A stretch of 64,000 nt of DNA from Phallusia mammillata (lineage: Eukaryota): assembly GCA_965637545.1 (NCBI GenBank), contig OZ281499.1, forward strand, positions 16,306,001-16,370,000, given 5' to 3'. Each line of letters begins with the position of its first letter. The first letter of the stretch is position 1. Below the pieces are notes generated by a model, which did not search any database, was not told the origin of the DNA, and saw nothing but the letters and a program-made list of their open reading frames with translations. Positions 18,929 to 41,603 of the stretch are shown here, in pieces. The position numbers were made by a program, and so were the translations under genes.

Positions 18929-21900
18929 ATGTTGCTCTGCAATTATCGTGGAGTAGTTGTTTGTCTTCTGCTTCTGTGTTGTTGGGAAACAAATGGATTT
19001 GGGTACTTAGACAAGGAATTTTCGGAATTTGACATGGAGATTGACGACGACAGTTTTGACGATAATGAAATGGTGAGATTTAAATGTCCGGTGTCCTAAA
19101 TCAAGCCATTTACCTGTTATGTCAAAATGGTAATGAATTCGATTGTCAACATCTAACAGTGCTTGATTTAAGCTAATTTCAATGGAAACCAGAAAACTGA
19201 GTTTTAAACCAAGTTTTTCAGAACATTAATATTAACAAAAACGAGGTAGTTCTTATGTTTCAAATTTTATCTAAAAAGTGGCTACCTAAACATGAACTCC
19301 CAAAGCGTTTGGCGTGCCATGCAAAAATCACATTGCTTGCTAAGCTGCTTGCTAAGGTAGCATGAACTCCACAACAGTTAAAGCTTCAGTTTAGTAATTT
19401 GATTTGGTTCATGGAAGTTAACAAAGGATTCAAATTTTACTCAGGAAAGAAAATTGGGTATGGAGTCCGAAGATAATCTTCATCAAGAAGAAGACATACT
19501 GCCGCTCAATGATTTAATAGATGATGAGGAAAGAGTCTTAGCCGCGATTGACTCTCAAGATGTAGAGGAGCATTTTCTGGACAAAGATGCTGATGATGTT
19601 GAAAGGGGGGAATCAGGTGCTAGCGATGAACATCTTATGGGGAGTAAAGTTACTGAGGATAACTTTCTGGAAAATATGTTGATGGACATCTTGCGTAATT
19701 ACGATGTGAATGGAATAAGTAAGTCCTTTAATGGCGACTATGTTGAATGCAAAAAAACAAACAAAACTACAAAAATACGACACTTAGATTGTTTATATTC
19801 GTAACAAAGTGATACAAATCTTTTCACAGGAAATATGAATTAACCAATTTTGCTGTGTTGGCAACTCAACAAGTTTGAAACTGCAACACTTTGTTCCATT
19901 GTTTTTTTTTTTGTACTGTAATGACAAAGATCAACATATAACAGTTACAGGATTTATAATTGTAATTAAAACACATTCTTTGTTTCGGCAGCCACCCATC
20001 GTACCAGCTGCCCAGTGTTCGTTAAACCAACGTTGCACGCGAAAATCAACTGCGGCAAGGTCACAACTATGTTCGGCAAGATCAAGTGGTGTCACGTACA
20101 ATGCAACACAGGATACAAGTAATTTGCCCCTTGCCTTACAATTACACATGTGAATTTTCGCTATGTGGTGTTTTAAATGTCCTACATCATCGTACATACA
20201 ACTAGTTTTCATCGTTTTAACATTGGTTGAACTAACGCATTTTGTTGTTTGAGTTTAGACTCAAGCACACGTTTCCGCAATACGAACTTTGTGGAAAATC
20301 TACTAAATATCGTTGGACCTATGAACTTCGAGGGCTAATTGAGGGGACAGAACGCTGTGTTCCAGGTAGGACTTTATCAAGTGAAACGAATTTGTTTCTC
20401 AGGCATCATATAATTTCTGTATGAAACTATTTTCTGAAGTGTCACAATTTTTCTGTAGGATCCAGCTCCCAAAATTTAACAGCTTGCACAACTACGGAAT
20501 GCTTTGGGACAGGTAAGCCACAAACTTTGCAACCGCCATTATTTATTTTTACATTAAACTCTTGTACTTGTTATAATATACAACCTTTATTTGAAAAAGG
20601 AGCAAACAGTTTATTGCTTTTTAGTCATGCACAAAAGCTCAATCCGTTTCGCAGCCAAATTTGTTTAATAGTTTAAATCTAAAATTAACTTGATCTGAGT
20701 TAATATTTAAAATCTTCAAGGTTGCTTTACATCATTTAATTCCTTTCAAGTTTTAAAAATCGTTGATATTGTTTGTCTTTTACCTTTGCAGCTTCGTATT
20801 ACATGAACCGAATCGATTTTGCGGTGAATCCATGCAACGACTTTTACGACTTTGCCTGTGGACGTTGGATCAAAGAAAACCCGATTCCAGCTTTCGAAAA
20901 CAAACTCGACACGATGGCAATTGTTCGCGAAAGGGTTTTTAATAATGTCGCAGGTAACACACAGCTGCTAGGAAAATGGTACGACTACTAACACAAGAAT
21001 CAACAGATCAAAAGTTTGCTAAATACCGATAGATGGCGTAAAAAACGCATTTAAAAAACAGTGAGTCTGGGGTACGTTTAGGGCAGGGGTGTCCAACACG
21101 TGGCACGCGTGCCAAAAGTGGCACGCAGAGCATTTGAAAATTTTCTTCTGCACATTCAGATGGTAAACATGAGGATTTATCAGGCAATTAATATTTTTCT
21201 ACTGATTCTTCTCCAAATTTAGTAAAGATTATCAGTATCAAGGTTACACAAACCCACTGATTAAATTGGTCGTTTTTTGAGCCCCGTTGCAAACTATTTG
21301 TATCTTGTGTCGCATAAACGGAATAAAATGTTTCTGGAGTATCACAAACAAGTTTACTCGCATTTGACGACATATATTTTTCTAATTAATTAGGGTTTTA
21401 CATATTGGCAAAATTTTCGGATTGAGCCCATACCGTTAACACGTTTAAGACATGGTTTGGAAAAAGTACCAAACGTTGGCACGCAAGTATATTTTAAAAC
21501 CAAAATTGGCACGGTGGTGTGTTCGAGTTGGACACCCCTGGTTTAGGCAGTAAAGGAACCAGTTTTTCAGGTTCATCCAGTTGGTATTACTACTATGAAA
21601 TCTCAGTCCAACCCTAATAGCCCTTACCGAGAGCATTTCAAAAATGCTCTCAAATAAGAACTTACATCAGAGAGAAGTTTCTATTTACCGATGGCGTTAA
21701 GACCTCTGGTAATTACTTACGTGAAACAGGTGACTTTAAGGCTGTTTGATTTGAGGAGCCTTTTTATAATAAAAATATCTTTAAAACTAACTTAAAAACT
21801 TTCCTACACTTTCCCTTTCTGAAACTAATTCGTCAATGCTCTTTTTGCCATTTTTTAATATTTAGCAAACTTTGTCTGATATGAGTTATTTTTTCCCTTG

Positions 21901-24900
21901 CCTAGCAAAAAGATTTTTATTTGATCAGTACGATTTCTATTGGATCATATGTTGTTTTCTGCAGCCTTACTAGGTAAACCGTACAAAAAGGGCGAATGTG
22001 CTGCTGTAAAGAAGGCGAAAATTGCGTACAAGGCTTGCATGAACACAGGTAATAAATTTCTTATCCTTATAAAAAGGAACTTAAAGTAAAGACAAGAGGG
22101 GCTACTGACCCAATGGGTTTGTAAAAGGGAGCTGAATATGTTAGAAACTAACGTTCTAGATTGATTGACTAAGCGGTTTGATATCCAATTTGTTCGCAGC
22201 ACTTATCGACAAGCTTGACGACAAACCGCTCAAAAAGCTGCTGAAAGGTTCAAAAATGGGTTGGCCTATTGTCGACAAAACGTGGAAAACCAGTGGTTTG
22301 TTCGTCGAAAAAACGTGGGCAAAAATACGTGGCCTGTACAACAATCAAGTTTTCATGAAGGTGACGGTAGCAAGGAAAAACGGGACCCATGTTATTCAGG
22401 TAACTGTTAAGATTAAGCTTGCAAGAAAGCGGGTACAATATCGAATGTTAATTAAGCATTCAAGTTGGGATTTTTCTCGATTTTGCAACCCTGTTACTTG
22501 CAAGAAGATTTGAGTTGAGCCTGGCGATTGTTAAACAATTGTCCTGATTATACAATATCGAATGTAATCCAAGCATTCAAGTTGGGATTTTGCTTGATTT
22601 TGCAACCATGTTACTTGCAAACATAGTGTGTCGAGCCTGACTACTGATAAATAATTACCCTGTTTTTTTGATCTGATTTGAAAATCGATTGATTTGAAAA
22701 CTATTGTACACACCGAAACTGTAACTTGTGATCAATTTTCAGACATGGAATGGCGGGCTTGCACTTCCCACTTCTTACTACCTGGATGGTCGACACGAAG
22801 CTGTAAGTTTTTTAAAACAATTTGCTTTATAATCTGCCATTACCGCACAAAAAAGGTTAATATAAAATCAGATATTAGTTACAAAGGAAATTTAAATAAG
22901 TATCTAGATCAGACGTATAAGTCGGGCTGGGCTTTTCGGGCCGGGTTCGGTTCAAGGCCGATTTCCGATTTCACACCTTGTGTTCGTAATTTCAAAGAAA
23001 TGAAATTACCCAGCTAAGTACCTAGTTGCTGGACTTAACCTAATGTCCTACAGTCCCAAAATGACCCATTTAAGCCATTGTATATTATTGTCTATTGTGT
23101 ACGTCATTTTTTATTACAGACCTGACAATCAAACTTTTTAGGGCCAAAGCAGGCTCTTCAAAAGCGATTCGGGTTTGGGCCCGCTTACATCTCTGATACA
23201 GACACATATCTTTATAGAAGGTGTTTTCTAAAAAAAGTAATTGTCAAGAAATTGCCACAATTAACATGGTTATAACGCACAAGATAGTAATAGTGCCAGT
23301 TTATTTACCATGTGCCACAATAAGTTTGGCGCGCGGCAGACTTTGGTTGGTAGGCAAGTTTTTGGGCACAGGACTTTCATTAGAAACTACAGGGTATGAT
23401 TTTCTTAATTGCAGAAATTGAAAGCTTATTACGACCTATTTCGCGACATTGCACTTATGCTTGGAGGTGACCCGAAAACCGTGGCAAAAGATGTTAGTTC
23501 TGTAAAAAAGTTCGAAAGGAAGTTGGCGTATCACAAAGTTCATGACAAATATCAACACACGTCAATGACCATCAAAGAAATGCAACTGAAGATTCCTGGA
23601 GTGGTAAGAATTTGTGTTTGTTAATGATCTTGTGTTTTCATTTGGAAACAACAAGACATGATATGATTCAGTTTAATTGCTGGTAAAACGCTTTTTAAGC
23701 CTAACTAAAAAGCGTTTGTATGTTTCTTTTTCTTTGCTTTATGATTCAAAACTAAATTTACATAAGAATATCCAATCCTGTAGTTTTACGTTTTCAATTC
23801 TATATCTGTAGTTTTACGTATGTAACTTTTGTTTTCTTGTCCTTACAATTTAACTATAAAAATGAGTCAATAACACTTGTTATAGAAGGGTCTTAACATT
23901 TCCTGTGGACCAACCTTTCCAATTATTGTGTCATAACAAACATTAAAAGTCTTATTTTTAGATGAATTGGCTAAAAACTTTCAAACTCATGATTCTGTCG
24001 CACCGCATTACGAAATCAACTGTTATTCAAGTGTGGAATGTGAAATTCATGCAAAACCTTCAAGCTCTAATCAAAAGCGGTGGCAAAAGGTACCGAATGC
24101 GTTCAAATTCCCGCACGTTGTACGGCATTTTCTTGTATTTTCATTTGTTTGAAAGGACTGTGCAAAACTACATCATATGGCGACTGGTGAAACACCGAGT
24201 CAAGAATCTGAGTTTGCGATTCCAGAAGCGATACTTGATGTATGAGAAGGCGCTATACGGGACTCGATCTCTTACATCTAGGAGTTATAAATGCTCTTCT
24301 GAGTTAATTCTATCCATGAAGGGAGCTACAAGCAAATTGTACATCGACAAGCACTTTCCAACATCTAAAAAGAAGGCCGTAAGTATTGTTTATGCTCCTA
24401 AAATGTTGGTTAACTTCTAAATGAGTTGCTTACACTATTTTTAAATAGACCCACAAACCACAATGCATACGTATGAAAATAGAAGCAAATATGAAAAAAA
24501 TAAGTACAACTTATTGTCAGTTGGTACAGGTCATTATTTCACTAATGATGACAATAGTTTTGTCGAAACGTTTGAATAATAAAAGTGATATGTTTTTTGC
24601 AACTTTAATGTTTATTTCGCTTTTAATTAAACTGCGTTTAAGTCCGTTTCATGTGCAACTAAATTAGTAAAAAGATTTCCTCATATTTTTAATGTGCCCT
24701 CAAGATCGGTGCTACAGTCAGAATTAGCACTATTCCAAAAAACTAATAACAAAGCAAAAAACTACACGTTCTTACACGTAATATTGAAACTACTCGTTAA
24801 AGCACATACAAATATTAGTAAGTCTGAAAGTAACATTGGTAGATAAATTCTTGACTAGGAATTGTGAGAATTGTTGACTTAAACGAAGCAAAGTTTAACT

Positions 24901-27737
24901 GGTGCGGTATACATATTTTTTACAGGCGACAGAGTTGTTTACTTATATCCGAGACGGATTTATTCAACTTCTCCACACCGAAGTTACTTGGATGGACAAG
25001 AAAACCAAAGATTACGCAATAAGAAAAGCTAATGCAGTCATTTATGATATCGGTTACAATCCGAAAATTTACCAGAACACTACCTATCTCGACAATCAAG
25101 TCTCACACGTGAGTATGGAGTATCCATAGTATCCACAAACCTCCACAAAAAACAAAATCCGGTTTCGGTGGTACTCAATAGATGTTTACAGTTTGCTTTC
25201 ATCAGGGTTTATAATTATAGCCTACAGTTTCGAAAGCCCGTTATAACATATTAATAAATTAAAGGAAATGTAGTTTAGTAATTAAACTATCCACCAAATG
25301 TACAAACAGTTTATCAACTACAAAACGTTTATGTGTTTCAAACTAAGATTGTAGTGTTGATTCCGTTTGTCAAAAAGCTAATAGAGCTCATTTGAAAAGT
25401 GCACCCTATTTCCACTTGGTAAAAGTTTTAACAACGTACATTCCATTGCATTTCTGTTTATAGCTACGAGTCAATGTTGGTGATTACTTTGGCAACACAT
25501 TGCGTGCTTTGACAACCATCGCACAAAACAAGTTTAAGCTGATCGGCCAAAGTTACGACCCAAAATTGGTTCCATTCACCTACAGACCAACCATGGTCAA
25601 CTCATTCTACAGCAACTCATACAACCGCATCAGTAAGTAGTCAGTGGTCCCAGTTGATTTCATTCCAGTTTCAAGTCTTCTGTCGGTAGCTTTTGTTACA
25701 TGTATTTCTTGCCTAGAAAGTGACATCAAAATTAAAAGAAGAGGGTAAACAAAGTTAAATTTTCCTATAGTAAACCAATTTGGTGATCAGGTTAATGAAA
25801 AGTTTTATAAACTGTATAGAACAAACTAATACACATACCTCTCTTGTAAACAGCATATTTTTACAGTGATTCTGGCAGCTATAATGCAATACCCGATGTA
25901 CTGGGGGGATACGTTTCCACGGTAAGTAAAAAATAATGAATTTATTTGATGTCGCCGTTGGACCTGTGGTCTTTAATACCCTAAAGTTTGCCTAAACGGA
26001 AAATACCGTTAAAGTATTGTGCCAGTCAATAATAGTTATACATCAATTTCTTACACCCCTGTTATATATGTATTTGTTTAAAGGGTTTTTCAATACGGCG
26101 CCATGGGCAGCATTGTGGGTCACGAGCTTACGCACGGTTTTGACGACACTGGTCGGCTGTATGGTGTGCACGGAAACAGATACAACTGGTGGTCAGCTGA
26201 GGCTGTCGCTGGGTTTAGAAAGCGATCTGGTTGTTTGGTAAACCAGTACAACAACTTCTATTCAATGGAGGCTGGATTGTATGTAAGTGAAGGCATGTAG
26301 GCGATCTGCAGTTAAATATTTAGTGTAACATAAAATACGTTAAAGTAACTCCTGTTTAAGCAACTAAAAGCGTGTAACTGTGTGATGCTTTTTCCTATTT
26401 TAAATAGTTGCTGTTTTAAAAAATACAAAAAAATTTACTTTTTCAACATGTGCATTCCTTTACTATTTTTGTGATGCACTTGGCAAAATTTGTGTAGCCC
26501 GTGTGGGCATTTGAAGTTCTATTTGGAACTTTTGATGTTTTATTTGGAAAAACATTTGGAGTTGCCACAATGCTTTGCAGCTTAATGGAACCAGAACTTT
26601 GACTGAGAATATTGCGGATAATGGGGGAATCAGAGAGGCCTACGTGGTGCGTATGACTTTGTGTAGTAATCAATACAGCAGTTCGAGTTAATGGCAACTG
26701 TTTAAACATCTGTTTTGTGAAGGCACTTTTCGGTTATTTTTTCATGTGTAGCATTTTTACCCCTAAGCCCCGCTTCTGCTTGTGGGCGAGAAACTAGTTG
26801 TAGAAAAGCTGTTTCAATTTTTTAGCAACTAAAGTGGTTTCATTGTCAGTTTATCTGTCTGTGCTATTTTAAGATTTGTGAAAACCGCGACATCGATTTA
26901 GGCTTAACACAACTTGATTAATCTTGTTTTGTAGGGATATCATATGTGGTTGAAAGCAAACGGACTGACTGGAGAGCAAATTGAACCAACAACTGGTTTT
27001 ACGAACGATCAGATGTTCTTTATCGGGGCTGGTGGTGTACGTGAAGTTGTACAATTTTTAACTGTTTTAGGCGAAGCGGCAGTTGGGGCTAAAACCTAAT
27101 TTTTGTACAAATCCCAAACTAGGCCCACAAATTGTTGAAATTATGACACAAAGTGGTGTCAGGCCTGAATTAAGTTCGTTTTAATGGTAGGTTAAGTTTA
27201 AAACCCGAATTACAAGTCACATATTTTACTAAGTTACTTTACGCTTAAATCAATACTTTACTGATAAAAGTATGAATAATATTTCTTACAAATAAATTTC
27301 CAGTCTATTTTTTGTTTACTGCTTTGATTTTTATTACAGTATCGATGCGGCCATTCAACACATGCGAGCGCTGTACATGAGGTAAATACCGACTCTCACA
27401 GCCCTTCGAGATTCAGGTGAGAATATAACCTAAGGAAAACATCGTGTTACAAGCCAACTTCTGAAATGGTTGTTAAACATTAACTGACGTTATTCTCTTG
27501 ATCGGTTCGTTTGAATGTCTTCTGGCACGATAGCAACCCCAAGTCTTTCTCATTCCGAAGTGCTTGCACATGTTTGTTTAGTGCTTTTGTTGTGCACCTA
27601 AAATTAAAGTACCTATTACCAATATTTATTTTTTTAGGACAGTCGGTTCCTTACAGAACTTTGACAAGTTTGCGGAGGCATTTAACTGCCCATTAGGTTC
27701 TTACATGAATCCGATAAAGAAGTGCATCATTTGGTAG
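18929..27737 (+). CDS. PHEX: PHEX-like M13 zinc endopeptidase, paralog 1 (signal peptide + acidic segment + Sushi-like module + M13 domain); 20 exons, 900 aa
   Basis: Exons 18929-19072, 19445-19718, 19992-20118, 20259-20365, 20459-20512, 20792-20953, 21965-22048, 22200-22399, 22743-22802, 23415-23603, 23962-24089, 24156-24378, 24926-25108, 25464-25632, 25867-25921, 26084-26282, 26581-26646, 26935-27036, 27340-27416, 27638-27737 total 2703 nt in frame. Motifs: CTTTEC, NPCNDFYDFACGRW, VNSFY, HELTH (26121-26135), [17 protein letters not shown], terminal KCIIW*. Family assignment is certain; PHEX subfamily assignment is by eye and the symbol means PHEX-like. Confidence 0.93.
21084..21540. mobile_element. 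hAT (Charlie-like) MITE, 457 bp, in intron 6 of M13 paralog 1
   Basis: Perfect 14-bp TIRs caggggtgtccaac / gttggacacccctg. 8-bp TSD gtttaggg / gtttaggc. Subterminal tggcacgc repeats at both ends. Confidence 0.9.
22434..22639. repeat. Diverged direct repeat, ~90 bp x2 (period 117), intron 8 of paralog 1
   Basis: tacaatatcgaatg...aagcattcaagttgggattt...ttttgcaacc.tgttacttgcaa...gagcctg at 22434-22523 and 22551-22639. Confidence 0.9.
22910..23195 (-). mobile_element. Older copy of the hAT MITE family at 43164-43475, opposite orientation, intron 9 of paralog 1
   Basis: Its reverse complement begins cagagatgtaagcgggccc and ends ccgaacccggcccgaaaagcccagcccgacttatacgtctg, matching both ends of the 43164 copy. 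The TSD is degenerate (atctagat / atacagac). Confidence 0.75.
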
Positions 27738-29682
27738 ATTCTGCGTCAAAAATGATTCACACCCAAGTTTGGCACGTGGTTTTAAAGGTGCTACCAGAAG
27801 AGTTGTACAGCGAGTAAAAAAAGAATAAGAATAGCAGTTTATGTGCATTTATATTTATGTTTGTTTGCAAAGTAGTTAATCAAGCTGAGGAGCATTATTG
27901 TACTGTTGTGTTTGTGTTGCAATTGGGCTTTGTGATCGGATCGTCAAAATTTTTGTTCGCTAATTATCATTGGATTTTACATGTACAGTCACTTTAGTGT
28001 AGTAATGTCCAAACTTTTTCGAGTGCAAGATTTCAGTCAAGGTTTTGCACTTGTCTTGAGATTTACCAAAGTTGGGATTTATCGCTATTTGAACTTGCTT
28101 GACTTTGTTAATTTATGCCCGGTCTTATTTAACGTCAATTTTTTCGTGTACAACATTACACACAGATAAAAAAAAAACACAAAGCGACGTACTGTCGAAG
28201 CTGAGAACCACTGCTTTATTGCAAAATTACATAACCAAAATATTTTGTCACTTATACTAAACAAATAAAAGCTTGTACGCCTGTCTTCTGCTTATTTTGG
28301 CTTCCATACTGTCAAAATAAATGACGGAAAGCAAACCAATAAAACTCCTTCAAATTTCTTCCAATTTATGGGTAAAACGCCGTGTTGGAACGGATGTCAT
28401 ATGATCCATAAGCTTTTTTAAATACCGTTGTGAAACTTTGAATTTCAATGATTTATTTTATTGATTTCCATAATCACGTAAAAATGCATTGTGAAGTGAT
28501 GTTTTTGACAGTCGCATATGTTTTCTGTTGAAAAGTTTCCATGTAATATCCAAGACTCGCAAATATCCAAGCCTAGACCTTATCTGAACTATATGAGATA
28601 AAATTTGGTGAATTTTGATTTGCTTTATTGAGCACTGTTGTTATTTTCGGGTTTAAGAAATACAAAAAGTAATACTTTGCCAAAGTTGAAATTTCATAAT
28701 TTAGTTGTTATTACAGACTTTAAAAGTAAAGTGTCAGAATACTAAATCTATAAAAACGTCCAACATTAAAATGTGTAACATACATGTTACAATTCGCTAC
28801 GCGATGATTTAAAGTTTAGATAAGGGTTTGTTTGAAATCAGAAAGCAGTAAATTACCACATTCATACATTCCCACGCATTGTCTGTGGCCAGCAGAATCC
28901 AAAATAAATCAGGCGTTTATCAATAGTGGGAAATCAGTTGCAATTAATCGTTTACAAAGTCCCATCAAATTCCTTGTACACAGATTACACTCTGTGTTGC
29001 TATTCCAAACGCTTGAAACAGCTCAAATTGCAACGAGGCTGTGTTAAGTATTGTGTAGGAGTTAAATAAGGTTGATCCGCTTCCTTTCCCTGCAAACTGG
29101 CGGGCTGTGGGCAACACCAGCTATTTTGCCAACCCATATGGAAGTCCGAAGCGCCGACGTACTGTTTTACAGTCACGTCTTTTTGAACAGGAGTGACTCG
29201 CTGGAGATGACTGTTACTTATCTAACACCGGCGCTATTGTTTCGCTTGATGCAGGCTTAACGGACTTTTGAAGAAAAGTTTTCTAGATTCACATTATGGT
29301 GCTTGAATGTTTGGCGTTATAGCTGTTATGAACACAATAAGTAACAATATTAGGCAGTGCTTTTTGAGGGATACCAATTTTTGTGAAAGAAAGTTCGATT
29401 TGCATGGTGTAGGCTCTATGGTCAAGCCTAGTACAACCTAGATTGTCAGTTTTTAATGTTTCTTAATAAATAGTTACAAAACGATAAAAAAACGCATAAA
29501 GAAAGATTTTAGGCATGCGCTGTTAGCTGTATAGAATATTAGTTTTCAAAATTGCGCTTTTATAGTAACAGATCACATTGCGAAAAGACGAATCGTGTAT
29601 TATCACTATTAATACAAACCCATGAAAGCTACCTCTGTTACATAAAAGATAAAGAAGTGCTTATTTGTTCAACAGGGGCGTC

Positions 29683-32600
29683 ATGTTTTTGCTCAAGTTA
29701 GGTGGGCTGTGTTTTGTCGTTTTTCTTGTGTATTGTCGCAATGCAAAAGCCATTGACGCTCCTATCTCAGTTGATTTTGACTTAGAAGTCGAAGATGACA
29801 GCACCATCGACGAAGAAGCGGTAAGTAGACCTCCTGTGTGTTTCCTTATTTCCTTTGAGTCAACTCCTTGGATTTTCCTTACTTGAATGCGCTGTCCAAC
29901 TGGGTAATTTCGATTTTCGCAACCAGCATTTTCTTTTCGGTTTCGACGATTTTTAAATTCGGTGATTTCCGTTTAACTGCGTTGTCAATTGGGCCGCTCT
30001 CTTGAGGAAAAGGAAACTTTTCTGAGACAGCATACAAAAGTACCATATTTGCTGAAACAATTAGCTTATGTTTTAACCGGTTTGCGTAAGTAATCCAACG
30101 TAAGATAATATAGGTTTTTATGATCGCATCAAGTATTCAATCATGTAGTTACTGTAAAATGAAACACAGCCGTTTAAAATTGTCCACAAGTTTAAAACTT
30201 TAAGTTCAAGATGGCCTGATATTGCTGTATCGGGACCCTATACTCGATGCTATGTTCGGTAACAGTTCTCGTCCAATTCTTCTACGAAAACCAAATAGTT
30301 TGCCGAATCAGCAGTTTAACGAAGATTCGGTTTTGTACGAGTAATTGGTTATGCTGCGTTTAAAATCTATTGCTTTTGATATAATAGTAGAAGTGAATCA
30401 CACGTCTAGTACACTTTGCTTTAGTATCTTGGCGCGCACAACCAAAATATTACCGCAAGTTTGGTACTTTCAGCACGTTTACGTTAACTTACGTTAAACC
30501 CGCTCCAATTATATTGTTTGGGCCGATTGATGTTGTCTGAGTTTTGGCAAATTGGCGCACAGACATTCAAATGTAATAAGTAGCGAAAAGCAAAACATAT
30601 TGGATCCTTTAACGTTGGCCAGGAAAACCCATACTCACTCAAAACCGTTTGATATTTTTAATTACAATCGTGTTTTTAATTTAAATTACAATCGTTACAA
30701 TTACGCTAGTACAATATGGACAAGCACTGCCCAAAAAGTATAGGTACATGATGTAGTTTACACTGGGATCGGATAAAAATAGGTATCGGGCCAACCCTAC
30801 TGACAGCACTGGCAAAATACAACATATTTATGCCATTTTTATGCAGGAAAGGGAAATGGCTTCAATATCTGATGAAAATCTCAAAGAAGCAAAATCAGAT
30901 CTAAAACTTGATTCAAAAGCTCAAAAAGAAGAGCAAGATGTCTTCCGATTAGATGGTATGCAGGATCTCGAAGATCGAATCCTCGAAGAGTTGGACTCTT
31001 TAACTGATGAGGATGATCAAGAAGTAGAAGAAGCTATGGAGGATGTTCAGGAAAATGAGATGGAAGACCTTGAAGAATATGATGATCAACATTTTATGAA
31101 GAAGAGAGACACAAGAGTTTTCTTCATGGAGAATTTATTGAGGGATATCTTGGCAAATTATGATGTGGAGGACGATGGTATGTTTTATAATGCATTCAAT
31201 ATTTTAAATTTCGGTTTTAACTTGTTTTAAAAACAACACGATTCCTCTAATTTTTAAAGCCAATGCTCTTTTTATGTCCATTGGATTATCGGAACTCGAA
31301 ACAAATACGATTTTAAACGGATAGTTAAAATTACTTAGTTTAAAATACTCACTTGTAAAAATTCATATACTTTGTGGTTAGCTGGAAAATTTTGGTTTGT
31401 CACCATACCGAATTTCGGGTTTCGCGTTTCAGATAGTGAAAGTGCAAGAATGAAGAGAAAATGTTCGACGTTTGTCAAACCAACCACAAATGCGAAAACT
31501 ACGTGTGGCAGAACGACAACAATGTTTGGAAAAATTAAGTGGTGCCATATTCAGTGCAATACAGGATACAAGTAAGGCTTCATAACTGAAAGGATTTGTG
31601 ATACAGGCTGTTGGCTTTTGCTGCTAAGTGTTTATAATATATGATTTACATACATGTATGAAAACAATTTATCTTGTGTTTGTTTGCATGCACCACTAGC
31701 TGTATAGTAACAGAATTGAATCCAATTATTATAGAGATAAACTGTTTTGGTCAGTTACTTTACGCTTTTTGCGAACCAGAAAGGTGTCAAGCATTTGTTT
31801 GGGGTTGTGATTCAACTAGTTTTGTTTTGCATTTCTAAAATACAGCCTTTAACTCGTAAACCTTTGCTCCCATGTATCAAATGCTAACTAATAGCTTTAT
31901 CGCCGTTCACAGTTTTGTCGCCATTTTTAGGCGCTCGTTGTGCACTAGAACAGGGGTCGGCAACCTTTTTTGCACCGCGGACCGTTTTTGAAAGTGAAAT
32001 TTTATCGCGGACCGGTCTTCAAAAAACTACAAATATTTAGCAATAAAAACACCTAAATTAGTTTATCATTCCCGGGATACATGGACAAAATGTTTTAAAC
32101 CGTTCCACAGGAAAAGTTATACGGCCCGGTAACGAACTCCTCGCGGATCGGTACCGGGCCGCGGACCGGCGGTTGCCGACCACTGCACTAGAACGCAAAA
32201 AGTCAACATGCTATTGTTTGGTCTCAAGTTGCAGTATAAGTTAATGCGAGTAACACAATAAAACCAGTGTCTTGGCAAATGGTGTGGAGCGACAGGACTC
32301 TTTTGTATCATACAAAACACCTTTTAAAAGCAAAATTCGTGATTTGTTTTGGCTGATAACGCACTTGTGTGATTTACGCAAATACGTAAAGCCTTGATCT
32401 TAAAAGCCAAACAATTTAGAAACTACTGTCGATATTGCAGCCCTTGCTTACATTGCAAAATACAGGTCTCATTTGCAATATATATGCTAGATACGTGTTG
32501 TTTAGGTGTTGTGTTTAGCAAGGTAAACATACAATATCTATATATTCTGTTGGTTTTCTTCACTTTTTGATGGTGGCAATGACTCATACCATGGTTTCCA

Positions 32601-35600
32601 ACATCGATTGTCCCAACACACTATAAGCATCTTTTGCCCAATGGGTGTCAAATATGTACGCAGCGAGACAAAGCTGTTTGTGACTCAAAATTTCTCATGT
32701 AGCTTATAATAGATTTAATAAGCATTTCATTTGTGTCTTAAAACTGACGTCATAGTTTGCGACAAATGTTATAAATATATTTTGCTTGTGTTTATCAATT
32801 TGGTAGCTCCACATTTTGTGCGTGGATGCTAATTTCGTGACTTGTTAACGATTTAATATGTGATTATTTAATAATGCAATGACTTAGCGCACAATAAACG
32901 CTTAAATTAACTTGTGATTCAATGGGTTATTCATCTATTATACCAAAATCATTATTTTCTTATTGTTCGTTTCCCTAGACATTTGTTTTCAGACATTTTG
33001 AGATTCAAGTGGTATTGGGGAGTTTGACCCCTGTTCCAAACAGATACATTTGTTTAGCTATAGGTTCGGCGACCCTTTTTTAAACTGTAGCTGGTATTTT
33101 CTGCTTTGTTGTAGATGAGCCTACATATTTGGGTGTTTTCTTAACGTGCTATCAAAATAGATGCTGCCATTTGTTGTGACTAGTTGTATAGTTTCAACTC
33201 ATATATGTGTTTGTTTTTAGATTGAAACACGCCTACCCGCAATACGAACTGTGCGGGAAAGCCACAAAATATAGATGGACTTACGAACTTCGAGGGCTAC
33301 AATCCGGCACAGAACGATGCATTGCTGGTTTGTGTGACTTCTAGCTGGTTTGTGTGACTTCTAGTCGTTGCTTTTTCGGAATTTATTACATAAAAAAGTT
33401 TTTACTTAAATTAGCCCCCCTATAGACATTTTATTGTCAGAATATAAATTAGTGTTTCAATTTTTGTAACAACAACATTTTATCCATGCAAACTCGTAGG
33501 AACTGGAACCACCACCAACGCATCTAGCAATGTCTGCACAACAAAGGAGTGCTTTTCCACAGGTAAACAAACAAAAATGTAAGCAATTTTTCAGTATGTT
33601 TGTTAAACAACTATATTAACTTTCAGCCGCGTATTACATGAACAAATTCGATTTTTCTGTCAATCCTTGCAACAACTTTTTCGACTTTGTTTGTGGACGT
33701 TGGTTGAAAGAAAATCCGATTCCTCCTTCCAAAAGTCATTTCCTTACCTACACAACAATTCGAGACCGTGTGATTTACGACATTGCTGGTAAAAAAATCA
33801 GTTATTGTGTAAAATTTTGCTGGTGTTTAATGTTTTTTGCTTTTAAAGTGATTTGGTGTCCTTACAGTTTACGTCTAATGACAAAATTGATTGTTATGGT
33901 TATAAAAAACAATGTTGAGGTCTTATATAAAATATTACTTATACTTCTTGCAGATTTACTTAATCTTCCAAACAAGTTGACAGATTGTTCCGCTGTGCAA
34001 AAAGCTAAAGTTGCATACAAAGCTTGCATGAATACAGGTAAGGATTGCCAAAGAATGTGCCGAACATTGCTTAATACCAACACGTTTCTAATAGTTTAAA
34101 TCTATCTACGTTCTTGCTGAAACAGTATTTTCTCATAGGGCAACTTATACGTCTCCCTAGGTAGCGTACTAACCAGGACCGAAAACGTTGGTTGGCTAAA
34201 GAACCAGTATCAAGGGAGCAAATACTGTTTCAATAACATGAATAGCATTAACAACCTATTTTGTTCCTTTAGCTTAATCCTATCAAATTTGTGGATAACA
34301 TTTACACATTCAAAAATGGGGTTTCTTTACATTTTAGCATTGATTAATCTGCTTGACGCGAATCCATTGATGAAGTTTTTGGAGAAAAAGTTGGCTTGGC
34401 CTATAATTGACCCAACGTGGGATCCAAACACGTTGTTTGTCGATAAAACTGTTGCCGAGCTTCGTGGTTTATACAACAACCAAGTTCTCCTGAAAGTAGT
34501 GGTGCGAAAACAGAACGGAGTCCATGTGTTACAGGTATATTCTAGTTGTATAATATTTCCAAATTTTACAAATGTATTTTTGCTAAGTTATATTTGAGTA
34601 AAAAAGTATTTGCTGAATTACAAGTATTTTTGGCTAAATTATGTTTGAACAAATCTCTGTACTGATAAAGTACCAAAATCGTCTATAGGTGATATCATAT
34701 ACTACTTCAAAAAAGATAGATCAATGTTTGCAAATATCTGTAGTACACAAATGTAGATTGTAGTGAAAAATCTCGAGGACAGATTGTGACCCTGTTTATG
34801 TAAATCCGTTACATCCGGCATTGCACAACACATTGTTGCACCCCGTTCGGCGTTCTACTTTCCCTTCCTGATGCGTAACTGACATGCTGTTGCTCTAAGA
34901 ATCCACAATTCAAAATCATTAATCATTTACTTTGCCTTTGTTTGACTACATTCAACATACGCTGTAGAAACTGACTGTAAAACCGGTCTAGGTTGCAAAA
35001 TTTAAGAAAATATTCTTATAAGGTAAAACATCAACATTGACAAATTATTTTGTAGACTTGGAAAGGAAAGATGGCACTTCCATTTGCTTACTACCTGGAA
35101 GAACGTTATGCTGATGTGAGTTCTTTGTATTTCTTCGTTAGATGTACCGAAAAAGCAAATTCATTTCAAAAGTTAGTTTCATGCACACAAAAATTTAGGG
35201 TCATTTTGGTTGGCAATGGCTTTGCTAATTCATTACCACTACACAGCAAAACTATTTTGAAGAAATGGAACAAAACTTTACACATAAAATCCTCCATATC
35301 AGGAGTCTGATCGTTTCTGGAGCCCTTATTTTGGAATATATGATTTTTTCCCCATCTGGTGCTCTGAACTATAGTACAATTTTTCTATTCCAAACTAATT
35401 AAACATCTTTCGTTTAGAAACTGAGCGCTTATTACGATTTAATGCGAGATACAGCTCTTATGCTGGGCGGCGACAGAGAAACTGTCGATCGGGATGTTCG
35501 TGACGTAAAAATATTTGAAAAGAAGTTGGCCTATCATAAAGCTTACGACTGGGACTATTACACTTCCATGACTCTCAAACAAATGCAAGACGAAATTCCC

Positions 35601-38600
35601 GGGGAAGTAAGCATTTGTTTGTTTTTTGCCGGACAAATTGCCAAGTTTTAATGTCTGCCTTGTGATAGACATTTTTCTGTTTGTATATTCGTAAAAACCT
35701 ATTGTCGTTTTATGAAGTTGGAGAGTAATTTAACGGTTACTTTTTAACAAATCGAACATTTTCAGCATAGCATTTGTAAACTGGCGCAAAACATTGGTTT
35801 AGATACCAAACAGCATTGGTTTTTATTCTCAGGTTATAACAAAGCATAACGTTTTTTTATGTTACCACTAAAACTAAACTGTCGATGCGAACATTTCTTT
35901 TTAGTTGAACTGGCTGACAACTTTCAAGCTTATGATCTTGTCTCATCCCATTAGCGAATCAACCGTTGTGCAAGTATGGAATGTAAATTATCTCAAAAAT
36001 CTTCAGGTATTGATCAAGGAAGCTGGAAAAAGGTAAACCATTTTTCAAAAAAACAAAAAAATCCATTTTTAAAGGTTGGTTTGTTAAAGCTTATAATATT
36101 ACTTACAGCTCCTGATTAACTAATACAAAATAGCCTCATTAAAAATAATACAAATCCACTGTAGTATTTAGCCATTGTGGTACACAGATGGCCCGATTTT
36201 GGTAATAAAAGCGAACAAGGATTTTGTTGTTTAACGTAAGAAACTAGGAAAATCTACTAACACCATACCTCACAGCAGACCCACATTTAGCTAATTTTCG
36301 ATAGTTGTCGTAAAGAGCACTTTATCTCTAACAATGCTCATGGTTAGGGCTATTGTGGTTGTGATAAGGTATTAGCGTTCAAAATTAAATAAAACTAGCA
36401 ATAGGACTTAGTTTCTATAATGATTTTTTTAAACCTACTTCATATCCGCAAAATAAAAAATTCAGCTCTTCGCGCCACTTACCGAAAATTACCTAAATGT
36501 GGGTCTGTCGTGAGGTATGGTGTTCTAGCAGCTCTACCAAGAAACTATATGCTTGTGATTTTAACCGTTGTATACAAGGGTGTTGCCTTGAGCTTTTGTT
36601 GCAAAATTACCTAATGAAAGTAAAAGTTAAAATGTGGATCTGCGGTCTTGTGCATTTGCGGTATACCAGCATTCTTACAAATAAGCACATGTATATAATT
36701 GTACTTGAAACTCAAACGAATTCATTAACTTTACAGGACAGTGCAGAACTACATGATGTGGCGTATAGTGAAACACAGAATCAAGAACCTGAGCTTAAGG
36801 TTTCAGAAAAGATACTTGCGGTACGAAGAAGCGATGGTGGGTAAAAGATCGCTTCCAACACGAAAGTACAAGTGCGCTGACAACATGATTTACACGATGA
36901 AGGGAGCTACTAGCAAACTCTTTATCGACAAATACTTTTCGCCAGCCAAAAAGAAGGCGGTAAGTTACACACAGTGTTAGAAAACTTTTGTACTCTCTTA
37001 CGGATGATCTTCAGAATTAAGTTTCAAAGTTAAGTACGATGAATCATAGTCGCCAGGCCTATATTATAGGAGTTGTACCGAGTCAGCTGGTCTCTTCAGT
37101 TCATGTTCATCTTAAGTATGATGAAGAAGTGTTTTCTTACCGCCTAATCATACCAGCTGGATTGTGTTTTATATATAGTTTTGACATGGTCAGTAATTGG
37201 CCAGTACGACATTGGTTAAGCACTGATTGCGTGTTTATGTCTTTACAGCTGTAAAATCAATGTTACTGTCAGAATTATAGAAAATGGCAAGAAAACGTTG
37301 CAGAGTAGCCTACTTTGGCTATTCGACTTTTGTCTAATAACTAACGCTGTTTTACGTGGTAATTTACAAACTTTAGGTTGGGCAGAAAATAGTTCTTGAA
37401 CCTCCCAATTAACTAAAAAGAACATTTTTGTCCTCCTAAATAAGTTTGAATCGAAAACATCCCGGGTATACAAAAGAAGTTACCAAGGTATACAAAAAAG
37501 TGAGCTCGGTTATATTAACACACCAAGGGTCTCTACCAAGTGATCTACACAAAATGGATTCGCATACTATTTAATCGCATACATTATACTGATCCATTTA
37601 CCAACGCTATATTGCCGCTAGACATTTGATCTCGCTTCGCCCCCGTTTCCTTATCACTCTGCCCTACGCGTTCAACATCCTTCTTATCGTAACAATCAGT
37701 TGGTGAACTCTGTTGACAGGACCAATATTTTGAAAAGCATGTGGTCAGAAAGCACAACACACTTCCAAAATTTGCTTTCGCTAAAAGCAATGCGATCAAA
37801 GCCTTGTTGGCAACAAAAGAAATTATTGTTTGAATTACGCGCAACAAACAACCCCTCAGAAGTAAATTCGATTTTTGGGTAAGTTAAAGCCCACAAAAGT
37901 TAAAATCTGTTCATACTCAAATTTAAAAAGGCATTAGTTTAAAAAAAAACATATTTGCAGTAGACTTTGATACACAAGTAAAAATAATATAGTCTAATAT
38001 GGATTGCAAGTGGTTTCGAATTGAGCCGTACCTGAAAGTAAAAGCACAAAACCAGGCCCAAGGCAATTGAAGTAGGCCCCAATCAATTCGGTTCTATTCA
38101 AACTTGAATGAAAAAGCTCACCTAGATTTACAACTCGAAAACTTATGTAAAATATAATATTATTCTTTGCGTTTAAAGTCAATTGTGACAACAGCTTGAC
38201 GATGTGTGTTACTTCACAGGCGCTCAGATTGTTTAACTTCATCCGAAAAGGTTTTATTCACCTTCTGGACTCCGAAGTTACATGGATGGACAAGGCCACA
38301 AAGGATTACGCAAAACGCAAAGCCCTCGCAATTACGGCTGATATTGGTTACAACCCAAAACTTTACAAAAACACAACTTACCTTGATGAACAAGTATCTC
38401 ACGTAAGTTGAATGCATAAGCATATACCTTGCACAAAACTGGTTACTGATGTGTACTGCATCAGTGGTCGGCAACCGCCGGTCAGCGGCCCGGTGCCGGT
38501 CTGCGAGGAGTTTGTTACCTGGCCATATATATTTTCAGGCTAAATACTTTAAAACATTTTGCCCATGTATTCCGGGGATAATAAACTAATTTCGTCGTTT

Positions 38601-41600: not shown

Positions 41601-41603
41601 TAA
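29683..41603 (+). CDS. PHEX: PHEX-like M13 zinc endopeptidase, paralog 2 (signal peptide + acidic segment + furin site + Sushi-like module + M13 domain); 20 exons, 923 aa
   Basis: Exons 29683-29820, 30847-31177, 31433-31571, 33221-33327, 33500-33562, 33627-33788, 33954-34037, 34338-34534, 35056-35115, 35418-35606, 35905-36032, 36737-36959, 38220-38402, 39043-39211, 39516-39570, 39976-40174, 40375-40440, 40521-40622, 40960-41036, 41504-41603 total 2772 nt in frame. 15 of 20 exons have the same length as in paralog 1. Motifs: [37 protein letters not shown] (HELTH 40013-40027), [31 protein letters not shown]. The symbol means PHEX-like. Confidence 0.94.
31951..32185 (+). mobile_element. hAT (Charlie-like) MITE, 235 bp, intron 3 of paralog 2
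   Basis: 15-bp TIRs caggggtcggcaacc / ggttgccgaccactg (one mismatch). Perfect 8-bp TSD cactagaa (31943-31950, 32186-32193). Confidence 0.93.
33324..33363 (+). repeat. Exact 20-bp tandem duplication spanning the exon 4 splice donor of paralog 2
   Basis: gctggtttgtgtgacttcta x2. GT donors at 33328 and 33348. Confidence 0.95.
38462..38694 (-). mobile_element. Second copy of the 31951 MITE family, inverted, intron 13 of paralog 2
   Basis: TIRs cagtggtcggcaacc / ggttgccgatccctg. TSD tactgcat / tactacat. Its reverse complement aligns end to end with 31951-32185 (shared aaattagttt.t.at.ccc, atacatgg.caaaatgttttaaa, aactcctcgc). Confidence 0.9.

What the first reader, a model, noticed from the sequence alone, without database searches (positions are those of the whole stretch)
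19445..31464. Polyacidic pro-segment with conserved helical islands, and a furin site only in paralog 2
Sequence: exon 2 is 29/91 D+E in paralog 1 and 41/110 D+E in paralog 2. The segments are otherwise divergent but share islands: EFDMEIDDDS / [21 protein letters not shown] / [12 protein letters not shown] and FLENMLMDILRNYDV / [15 protein letters not shown]. Paralog 2 has KKR (31099-31107) and R-M-K-R (31447-31458) just before the Cys module; paralog 1 has TTHRTS there. Established: R-X-K-R is the furin consensus, and M13 enzymes generally lack inhibitory propeptides. Inference: the acidic segment resembles PHEX-type acidic substrates in charge (not a Ser-rich ASARM homolog) and may act as an electrostatic auto-inhibitor, a built-in substrate or a Ca2+/mineral-targeting tag. 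It would be removable in paralog 2 and retained in paralog 1.
Basis: partly seen in the sequence, partly recalled or inferred. Interest (0 to 1): 0.7.

Follow-up and report, generated by a model that had tools for sequence, protein, structure and literature searches.

The report
Acidic tail on secreted tunicate PHEX enzymes
Two neighbouring sea-squirt genes encode secreted relatives of the bone enzyme PHEX, in which the usual membrane anchor is replaced by a signal peptide and a long, disordered, very acidic tail attached to an unusually basic enzyme body. This layout is shared by other sea squirts and may be a built-in charge mask, though nothing yet shows that the tail is cut off.

Summary
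Exon 2 has 29/91 D+E in paralog 1 and 41/110 in paralog 2. KKR lies at 31099-31107 and RMKR at 31447-31458, and paralog 1 has TTHRTS there.

- **Expression:** transcript contigs from two studies splice paralog 2 exactly as read. Paralog 1 was not tested.
- **Identity:** both genes are intact, 20-exon tunicate co-orthologues of vertebrate PHEX.
- **Shared layout:** signal peptide, acidic segment, 6-Cys module and M13 domain also occur in Ciona (two tandem genes), Styela and Clavelina. The layout is tunicate-wide and is absent from 94-96 other M13 proteins sampled.
- **New here:** the tunicate catalytic domains are exceptionally basic (net +28 to +45, Clavelina +5) against -39 to +16 elsewhere. 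They also keep PHEX-type pocket residues, including Arg where neprilysin has Trp693.
- **Structure:** AlphaFold2 calls the acidic segment disordered and shows no confident docking.
- **Conservation:** between species the segment keeps little beyond its composition, a short motif after the signal peptide, and an amphipathic helix before the Cys module.
- **Furin motif:** R-x-K-R occurs only in paralog 2 among the six proteins.

My best reading, at modest confidence, is a tethered polyanion that masks a basic, acid-seeking peptidase. Removal as a pro-segment is unproven. The scan has not noted this on other DNA.

The parts
18929..27737 (+). Paralog 1: 20-exon gene for an 899-aa secreted PHEX-like M13 peptidase
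   Evidence: Spliced model with GT..AG at every intron and no stop codon. It carries HELTH and ENIADNGG. The active-site neighbourhood is derived (LAAIMQ, GGYRC). It has the long branch in the tree (0.42). No RNA check was done.
18929..19072 (+). Paralog 1 exon 1: signal peptide plus island 1 (EFDMEIDDDS)
   Evidence: 48 codons, phase 0, the same length as exon 1 of Ciona PHEX. The motif FDMEI lies at residues 34-38.
19445..19718 (+). Paralog 1 exon 2: polyacidic segment with islands 2 and 3
   Evidence: 91 codons plus 1 base, 29 D+E and 7 K+R. At 274 nt it is not a multiple of 3, so it cannot be skipped in frame. The highest helical hydrophobic moment is at NFLENMLMDILRNY.
19992..20365 (+). 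Paralog 1 exons 3-4 (19992-20118, 20259-20365): linker TTHRTS and the 6-Cys module
   Evidence: It is 64-77% identical to paralog 2. No Pfam family was found.
29683..41603 (+). Paralog 2: 20-exon gene for a 923-aa secreted PHEX-like M13 peptidase
   Evidence: Model. Exons 1-9 are confirmed by transcript contigs in 4 runs from 2 studies. It keeps PAGEMQ and VRC and has the short branch in the tree (0.17).
29683..29820 (+). Paralog 2 exon 1: signal peptide (…NAKA|ID) plus island 1 ([10 protein letters not shown])
   Evidence: The contigs begin at 29674/5, which is 8-9 nt before the ATG, and there is no upstream in-frame ATG.
30847..31177 (+). Paralog 2 exon 2: polyacidic segment with islands 2 and 3
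   Evidence: 110 codons plus 1 base, 41 D+E and 13 K+R. Both flanking joints are seen in RNA contigs. Variants V106E and E111D occur in two runs.
31099..31107 (+). KKR dibasic site, six residues before the island 3 helix
   Evidence: The same alignment column is basic in all six tunicate proteins and is [KR]R in three of them: paralog 2 KKR, Ciona SKR and Clavelina EKR.
31433..31571 (+). Paralog 2 exon 3: linker [10 protein letters not shown] and the first half of the Cys module
31447..31458 (+). R-M-K-R, the minimal furin motif, followed by K-C
   Evidence: No variant is seen there in four RNA runs. R-x-[KR]-R is absent at this place in paralog 1, both Ciona genes, Styela and Clavelina.
33221..33327 (+). 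Paralog 2 exon 4: second half of the Cys module ([18 protein letters not shown]…)

Best explanation
**Shown**
- The window carries two tandem, intact genes for secreted tunicate co-orthologues of vertebrate PHEX.
- The type II membrane anchor of other M13 enzymes is replaced by four parts in order: a cleavable signal peptide; a constitutive, exon-encoded polyacidic segment predicted to be disordered (net -31 and -36); a basic 6-Cys beta-rich module; and an exceptionally basic catalytic domain (net +45 and +29).
- The catalytic domain keeps the PHEX-type pocket residues, with Arg where neprilysin has Trp693 and, in paralog 2, Glu where neprilysin has Ile558.

**Inferred**
- The acidic segment acts as a tethered polyanion. 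It neutralises and competitively masks the basic enzyme, which seeks acidic substrates, during secretion and perhaps afterwards.
- This would resemble the acidic propiece of eosinophil proMBP, or an acidic auto-inhibitory tail.
- The short motif just after the signal peptide (aromatic-D-x-E-hydrophobic) and the amphipathic helix before the Cys module would be the specific contact points.
- In some family members the tail may be shed by proprotein convertases at basic sites. Paralog 2 has KKR before the helix and RMKR before the Cys module. Paralog 1 lacks such sites and would keep the tail or lose it some other way.
For: - **Gene models and expression:** searches give the models, and RNA joints confirm paralog 2.
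- **Orthology:** the tunicate clade is sister to vertebrate PHEX with 100/98 support.
- **Shared layout:** the same architecture occurs in Ciona intestinalis (926 aa and 840 aa, in tandem), Styela and Clavelina. The same exon layout occurs in Ciona.
- **Rarity:** among 96 full-length M13 proteins, only the tunicate ones have an extension over 150 aa that is net negative and has its hydrophobic stretch at residues 1-11.
- **Charge segregation:** tails are -15 to -38, Cys modules +4 to +11, and M13 domains +28 to +45 (Clavelina +5). The 94 non-tunicate M13 domains range from -39 to +16 with a median of -9.
- **Pocket residues:** PAGE[LM]Q, an extra residue in FW-G, and VRC are shared with vertebrate PHEX.
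- **Known biology:** PHEX prefers acidic P1' residues and binds or cleaves acidic ASARM peptides (PMC2259306, PMC3579870, PMC4026222).
- **Disorder:** AlphaFold2 of the Ciona orthologue gives pLDDT below 50 for residues 1-170, with helices only at islands 2 and 3.
- **Island 1:** the motif lies at residues 30-34 in all six proteins, with a shuffle chance of 0.3-1.1% each.
- **Precedent:** proMBP is an acidic propiece that neutralises a basic domain (PMC11483036).
Against: - No experiment or proteomic datum shows binding, inhibition or cleavage.
- AlphaFold2 finds no confident docking of any part of the tail. The N-terminal piece modelled alone was unusable, with mean pLDDT 52.
- Tail and domain charges do not compensate across the six proteins. 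Mature net charge runs from -7 to +31, and r is about 0.2 with n = 6.
- The Ciona 840-aa protein has a +41 domain with a tail of only -15.
- Apart from two short islands, the sequence is hardly conserved between species (z -0.4 to 3.9). That fits any role that depends only on composition.
- R-x-K-R is present in one of six proteins, so convertase removal at that place cannot be the general mechanism.
- Lys at P1', a disulfide Cys at P2' and acidic residues at P7-P10 are, from my own knowledge of furin specificity, unfavourable.
Confidence: 0.38

Rival explanations
1. Passive spacer. When the tunicate lineage swapped the membrane anchor for a signal peptide, it acquired a disordered acidic stalk. 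The stalk only keeps a very basic secreted protein soluble and non-sticky, or simply drifts. It does not regulate activity and is not processed.
For: - Length varies from 63 to 149 residues.
- Cross-species similarity is barely above composition.
- AlphaFold2 predicts disorder.
- Charge-preserving polymorphisms V106E and E111D occur.
- Tail and domain charges show no compensation.
Against: - Island 1 and the island 3 helix are conserved in position across four tunicate lineages.
- The exon is constitutive and retained in all six genes.
- A high D+E fraction (0.26-0.37) is maintained despite rapid sequence turnover.
Confidence: 0.3
2. Targeting tag. The polyacidic segment binds Ca2+, mineral or a cationic matrix component of the tunic or blood and so positions the enzyme.
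For: - The segment has high D+E density.
- Vertebrate PHEX acts in mineralising matrix on acidic mineral-binding peptides (PMC3579870).
- Some ascidians form calcareous spicules (my own knowledge).
Against: - Ser is scarce and S-x-E sites are few, so the segment does not look like a phosphoprotein.
- The architecture occurs in Ciona, Styela and Clavelina, which to my knowledge are not known for spicules.
- No Pfam or known Ca-binding motif was found.
Confidence: 0.12
3. Granin-like sorting or prohormone-like precursor. The acidic region aggregates in the regulated secretory pathway. Dibasic sites flanking island 3 release a roughly 30-residue amphipathic peptide with a function of its own.
For: - [KR]R lies 6-8 residues before the helix in paralog 2, Ciona PHEX and Clavelina.
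- Basic residues follow the helix (RMKR, PRK, KKRK).
Against: - Three of the six proteins lack dibasic sites.
- The helix sequence itself is poorly conserved.
- No peptide family matches.
- No tissue data are available.
Confidence: 0.07
4. This rival concerns only the furin part of the finding. RMKR in paralog 2 is a chance elaboration of a linker that is basic in all homologues, with K/R at position -3 from the first Cys in every protein. It is not cleaved.
For: - The linkers read HRTSC, PKTSC, PRKSC, QKGTC, PRKC and MKRKC.
- The motif is unique to one recent paralog.
- P1' is Lys, P2' is a Cys of a disulfide-rich domain, and the upstream residues are acidic.
Against: - R-x-K-R is the canonical minimal furin motif.
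- In the Ciona model the equivalent linker is poorly ordered, with pLDDT below 50 to residue 170 and 60 for residues 171-180.
- The motif is invariant in four RNA runs.
Confidence: 0.5

Closest known systems
Vertebrate PHEX (M13 family, MEROPS M13.091)
   Same: - It is the sister clade in the tree and 36-39% identical.
- It shares PAGE[LM]Q, the FW-G insertion and Arg at the neprilysin Trp693 position.
- PHEX domains are also the most basic of the non-tunicate M13 proteins sampled.
   Different: - Vertebrate PHEX is a type II membrane protein with a short cytosolic tail and no acidic segment or Cys module.
- Its catalytic domain has a net charge of -3 to +16, against +28 to +45 here.
- Its acidic partners (ASARM peptides of SIBLING proteins) are separate proteins, not part of the same chain.
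Neprilysin-2 / SEP / NL1 (MMEL1), the M13 enzyme with a furin-like site
   Same: It is an M13 ectoenzyme that a furin-like convertase site near the N-terminus of the ectodomain turns into a soluble secreted form (PMC4131500).
   Different: - There the site lies in a 23-residue, alternatively spliced, in-frame exon and releases the enzyme from its membrane anchor.
- Here the protein is already soluble.
- The acidic exon cannot be skipped in frame (274 and 331 nt).
- Cleavage here would remove an acidic tail rather than an anchor.
Charge-neutralising acidic propieces (eosinophil proMBP-1; anionic propieces of defensins and frog antimicrobial peptides)
   Same: An N-terminal acidic segment follows the signal peptide and precedes a strongly basic mature domain. 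It is proposed to neutralise that domain during transport (PMC11483036).
   Different: - Those mature parts are small cytotoxic proteins, not an enzyme of about 670 residues.
- Their removal is documented, whereas here it is not.
- Net charges are not balanced in several tunicate members.
Soluble insect M13 enzymes (Drosophila NEP2, Nepl15)
   Same: They are M13 members secreted through a signal peptide rather than held by an anchor (PMC2259306, PMC7822871).
   Different: - In the sequences sampled they have no long acidic extension and no Cys module.
- They are not in the PHEX clade.

Membership tests
Peptidase family M13 (neprilysin family) | Peptidase_M13_N and Peptidase_M13 domains with HExxH and the ENxADxGG zinc-ligand motif | tested here: met
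   PF05649 matches exon 6 at E = 1.4e-10. HELTH and ENIADNGG are in both full models. The Ciona orthologue model superposes on neprilysin and ECE-1 with TM about 0.9.
PHEX orthology group | Groups with vertebrate PHEX to the exclusion of NEP, MMEL1 and ECE | tested here: met
   IQ-TREE with LG+C20 places the tunicate clade (100/100) as sister to vertebrate PHEX (100/98). This agrees with Cin3/Cin4 in PMC2259306.
PHEX orthology group | PHEX-specific pocket residues (Glu for NEP Ile558, Arg for NEP Trp693) | tested here: met
   Paralog 2 and the other tunicates have PAGE[LM]Q and VRC. Paralog 1 keeps the Arg but has LAAIMQ. The residue numbering comes from my own knowledge of human neprilysin.
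PHEX orthology group | Type II membrane topology | tested here: not met
   The only hydrophobic stretch lies at residues 1-22, is short and is followed by small residues, for example AKA|I. No signal-peptide predictor was available.
PHEX orthology group | Strict preference for Asp/Glu at P1' | not testable with these tools
   This needs an enzyme assay.
Furin / proprotein convertase substrate | R-x-[KR]-R motif in an exposed, flexible stretch of a secretory protein | tested here: inconclusive
   The motif is present in paralog 2 only. The equivalent linker in the Ciona model is poorly ordered. However, P1' is Lys and P2' is Cys. No cleavage-site predictor was available.
Furin / proprotein convertase substrate | Site conserved among orthologues | tested here: not met
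   R-x-[KR]-R is absent at that place in the five other tunicate proteins.
Protease pro-segment (zymogen) | The segment is removed on maturation and inhibits or chaperones the catalytic domain | not testable with these tools
   AlphaFold2 gives no confident contact (pLDDT below 50). That is weak negative evidence only.
ASARM motif (SIBLING proteins) | Ser/Asp-rich stretch with clustered S-x-E phosphorylation sites | tested here: not met
   There are 8-9 Ser in 122-143 residues and only 2-4 S-x-[DE] sites.
Sushi/CCP domain (for the adjacent Cys module) | Match to PF00084 and a four-Cys pattern | tested here: not met
   No Pfam family matches at E <= 1 for four tunicate Cys modules or for the window exons. 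The module has six Cys. Its fold was not identified, because the isolated model was too poor.

The most novel reading that the evidence does not exclude
Tunicate PHEX is the first M13 peptidase with a zymogen-like, cis-acting polyanionic auto-inhibitor. The acidic tail would occupy the basic, Asp/Glu-directed substrate chamber as a tethered pseudo-substrate or self-substrate and would be shed by convertases or by the enzyme itself. That would suggest the PHEX-acidic-peptide relationship of vertebrate bone (PHEX with ASARM) began as an intramolecular interaction in the chordate ancestor.
Probability: 0.2. Interest if true: 0.75.

Novelty: new variant of a known kind. Interest (0 to 1): 0.5.

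Why it matters
PHEX is a disease gene (X-linked hypophosphataemia), and its physiological substrates and its origin before bone are still debated.

The nearest invertebrate relatives of vertebrates have soluble PHEX orthologues. In these, a hyper-basic catalytic domain is fused to a polyacidic tail. This gives a concrete and testable hint that the ancestral enzyme handled polyanionic sequences.

It would also be the first case of built-in regulation by an N-terminal segment in a family that is regarded as lacking propeptides.

I found no paper that describes the N-terminal architecture of tunicate PHEX. The one phylogenetic study that includes these genes singles out the N-terminal region as highly variable and removed large uninformative insertions from its alignment (PMC2259306).

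Tried and rejected
- **Gene-model artefact:** rejected for paralog 2 by the RNA joints.
- **Family matches:** no Pfam family matches the acidic exon or the Cys module.
- **Word search with the Ciona N-terminus** (residues 1-262) found only itself. The N-terminus is too divergent for sequence searches.
- **More tunicate N-termini:** I tried tunicate DNA held in JGI and ENA 'metagenome' contigs (L002-L008). The stored stretches stop at exon 4 or later, and an upstream ORF look-up found nothing.
- **AlphaFold2 of the helix plus Cys module alone:** mean pLDDT 52, so it was not used for fold search.
- **Charge compensation** between tail and domain across species: no correlation (r about 0.2, n = 6).
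- **Ciona orthology of the two paralogs:** I considered paralog 1 and paralog 2 as orthologues of the Ciona 840-aa and 926-aa genes, because the tandem order is the same. The tree instead joins paralog 1 and paralog 2 at 100/100, so this is an independent duplication or gene conversion.
- **The window's own proteins** are not in the protein collections.


Full report
**1. The observation**

The window has GC of about 0.36 and no N. It carries two tandem genes on the + strand.

The first three exons of paralog 1 are 18929-19072, 19445-19718 and 19992-20118. Those of paralog 2 are 29683-29820, 30847-31177 and 31433-31571. All have GT..AG borders.

- Exon 2 translates to 91 codons with 29 D+E in paralog 1.
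- Exon 2 translates to 110 codons with 41 D+E in paralog 2.
- KKR lies at 31099-31107 and RMKR at 31447-31458, followed by K-C.
- Paralog 1 reads TTHRTS-C at the homologous place.

The two acidic segments resemble each other far beyond what composition gives (z = 13.5 over 500 shuffles).

**2. Expression and gene models**

Eight runs of the same organism (name coded), which the run-finder guessed to be RNA rather than having them on record as RNA, held 16-19% of the words of a 6.5-kb stretch of paralog 2. That is about the exon share.

I laid four of these runs, from two studies, on 29400-35399. Single contigs of 1.1-3.3 kb join 29820|30847, 31177|31433, 31571|33221 and the next six introns, all GT..AG. 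The contigs start 8-9 nt before the ATG at 29683. No exon-2-skipping joint was seen.

Exon 2 is 274 nt in paralog 1 and 331 nt in paralog 2, so it could not be skipped in frame.

Two runs carry V106E and E111D in the acidic exon, which are charge-keeping changes.

Using the Ciona protein as a guide, I built full 20-exon models of 899 aa (18929-27737) and 923 aa (29683-41603). Neither has stops or non-canonical introns, and both carry HELTH and ENIADNGG.

Paralog 1 was not checked against RNA.

**3. What the genes are**

An exhaustive HMMER search with an M13 exon pair found Ciona savignyi as the best hit. A word search with that protein then returned four full-length tunicate proteins, which NCBI names PHEX or PHEX-like:

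- Ciona intestinalis, 926 aa
- Ciona intestinalis, 840 aa
- Styela clava, 884 aa
- Clavelina lepadiformis, 920 aa

After these came vertebrate PHEX at 36-39% identity, and only then MMEL1 and neprilysin at 32-34%.

A maximum-likelihood tree (LG+C20) shows three things:

- The tunicate clade (100/100) is sister to vertebrate PHEX (100/98).
- The two window paralogs are each other's closest relatives (100/100).
- Paralog 1 has the longer branch (0.42 against 0.17).

Bland et al. 2008 had already placed two Ciona genes with PHEX, after noting the N-terminal region as highly variable and removing large uninformative insertions from their alignment (PMC2259306).

The tunicate proteins share several PHEX signatures with vertebrate PHEX:

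- PAGE[LM]Q, where other M13 enzymes have PAGILQ.
- An extra residue in PF[FY]W-G.
- VRC, where others have VWC. This puts Arg at the position of neprilysin Trp693 and Glu at Ile558, both S1' pocket positions (the numbering is from my own knowledge).

Paralog 1 has diverged in this region (LAAIMQ, GGYRC).

**4. The architecture is tunicate-wide**

All six proteins have the same order of parts:

- a short N-terminal hydrophobic stretch followed by small residues, which reads as a signal peptide;
- a segment of 63-149 residues with 26-37% D+E;
- a module with six Cys (consensus CS.F…C…LG…WC…C..GY…P.YELCG..TKYRWTY.L.G…E.C);
- the M13 start, C.T.EC.

In Ciona the 840-aa gene lies directly upstream of the 926-aa gene on the same strand. 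The exon layout there matches the window: exon 1 covers residues 1-48, one acidic exon covers residues 49-164, and the next exon starts a few residues before the first Cys.

The others have a more hydrophobic stretch at residues 20-99, which fits a type II anchor.

**5. What is conserved in the acidic segment**

Between species, the similarity of the segments is only weakly above composition (z -0.4 to 3.9). A search with the Ciona N-terminus found only itself.

Two features are conserved in position.

- **Island 1.** A motif [FYHA]-D-x-E-[IVFY] lies at residues 30-34, a few residues after the predicted signal-peptide cut, in all six proteins. The shuffle chance is 0.3-1.1% per protein, though the pattern was chosen post hoc.
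- **Island 3.** An amphipathic helix lies 10-25 residues before the first Cys ([74 protein letters not shown]). It gives the highest or near-highest helical moment in the segment.

The column six to eight residues before that helix is basic in all six proteins. It is dibasic in three: paralog 2 KKR, Ciona SKR and Clavelina EKR.

The linker before the first Cys always has K/R at position -3. R-x-K-R, however, exists only in paralog 2.

**6. Structure prediction**

AlphaFold2 of the 926-aa Ciona orthologue, run with a 78-row alignment, gave these results:

| Region | pLDDT and structure |
|---|---|
| M13 domain | above 90 |
| Cys module | 60-90, beta-rich |
| Residues 1-170 | below 50; low-confidence helices at 69-79 (island 2) and 139-156 (island 3) |

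The segment is therefore predicted to be disordered with transient helices, and no confident docking is seen. The tool does not return coordinates, so I could not inspect contacts.

The helix plus Cys module modelled alone was unusable. Foldseek on the full model returns neprilysin and ECE-1 with TM about 0.9.

**7. A new observation: charge segregation**

| Part | Net charge |
|---|---|
| Catalytic domain, window paralog 1 | +45 |
| Catalytic domain, window paralog 2 | +29 |
| Catalytic domain, Ciona 926-aa | +28 |
| Catalytic domain, Ciona 840-aa | +41 |
| Catalytic domain, Styela | +34 to +35 |
| Catalytic domain, C. savignyi | +32 |
| Catalytic domain, Clavelina | +5 |
| 94 non-tunicate M13 proteins | -39 to +16 (median -9) |
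| Cys modules | +4 to +11 |
| Acidic segments | -15 to -38 |

The most basic of the non-tunicate proteins are themselves PHEX.

Each protein is therefore a block polyampholyte: a polyanionic tail tethered to a polycationic enzyme whose pocket residues suggest PHEX-like preference for acidic substrates. PHEX is reported to prefer acidic P1' residues and to bind and cleave ASARM peptides (PMC2259306, PMC3579870, PMC4026222).

**8. Mechanism**

The best-supported reading is that the tail acts as a tethered polyanion that neutralises or competitively masks the basic enzyme. This would be comparable to the acidic propiece of proMBP-1 (PMC11483036). Islands 1 and 3 would be the specific contacts, and basic sites would allow optional shedding.

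This is inference, and several results count against it:

- Charges are not balanced across the six proteins.
- AlphaFold2 sees no docking.
- The furin motif is not conserved and sits in an unfavourable context (P1' Lys, P2' Cys, acidic P7-P10; my own knowledge).

The rivals are a passive solubility spacer, a Ca2+/mineral/matrix tag, and a granin- or prohormone-like precursor. RMKR may well be a lineage-specific elaboration of an always-basic linker and may never be cut.

**9. Comparison with known systems and novelty**

The nearest M13 precedent for a furin-type site is neprilysin-2/SEP. There an alternatively spliced 23-residue exon carries the site and releases the ectodomain from its anchor (PMC4131500). 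Here the protein is already soluble and the acidic exon is constitutive.

Soluble insect M13 enzymes lack such a tail. I found no paper on the N-terminus of tunicate PHEX.

I rate this a new variant of a known kind, of moderate interest. The architecture is real, expressed, lineage-wide and unusual for the family, but its function is untested.

**10. Limits**

- The window's own spliced proteins could not be submitted for structure prediction.
- No signal-peptide or convertase-site predictor was available.
- Only six proteins from five species could be compared.

Noticed in passing
window 31940-32190 (intron 3 of paralog 2): An element of about 240 bp has terminal inverted repeats (GGGGTCGGCAACC … GGTTGCCGACC). 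Many unrelated transcript contigs pile up on it (summed depth up to 284) and run on into unlike sequence. It looks like a MITE-type repeat present in many transcripts.
   Followed up: no
window 25464-27036 (paralog 1 exons 14-18): Paralog 1 has a derived active-site neighbourhood. It reads VNSFY…MILAAIMQYPMYW and FFIGAGGYRCG, where paralog 2 and the other tunicates keep VNAFY…[12 protein letters not shown] and [11 protein letters not shown]. It also has the long branch in the tree. This fits a changed specificity or relaxed constraint.
   Followed up: partly
window 24090-24155 against 36033-36736: The homologous intron is only 66 nt in paralog 1 and remains open in frame with the flanking exons. 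In paralog 2 it is 704 nt.
   Followed up: no
L001 (Ciona intestinalis AP043578.1, 8872578-8903336): Ciona has the same tandem order as the window. The shorter-tailed copy without dibasic sites lies upstream, and the long-tailed copy with KR sites lies downstream. Yet the tree joins the two window paralogs at 100/100. This points to independent duplication or gene conversion between tandem copies.
   Followed up: partly
L002-L008 (JGI samples 3300027611, 3300001689, 3300001539; ENA ERZ25067576): Contigs filed as metagenomes carry an intron-rich PHEX-like gene that is 50-84% identical per exon to paralog 2. This is tunicate host DNA inside 'metagenome' assemblies.
   Followed up: partly
window 31025 and 31041: Two runs of one study carry non-synonymous variants in the acidic exon, V106E and E111D. 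Both keep or increase the negative charge.
   Followed up: partly
window 18809-18928: An in-frame ATG lies about 40 codons upstream of the modelled paralog 1 start. Using it would bury the hydrophobic stretch. Homology with paralog 2 and the other tunicates favours the ATG at 18929, but the 5' end of paralog 1 has no RNA support here.
   Followed up: no
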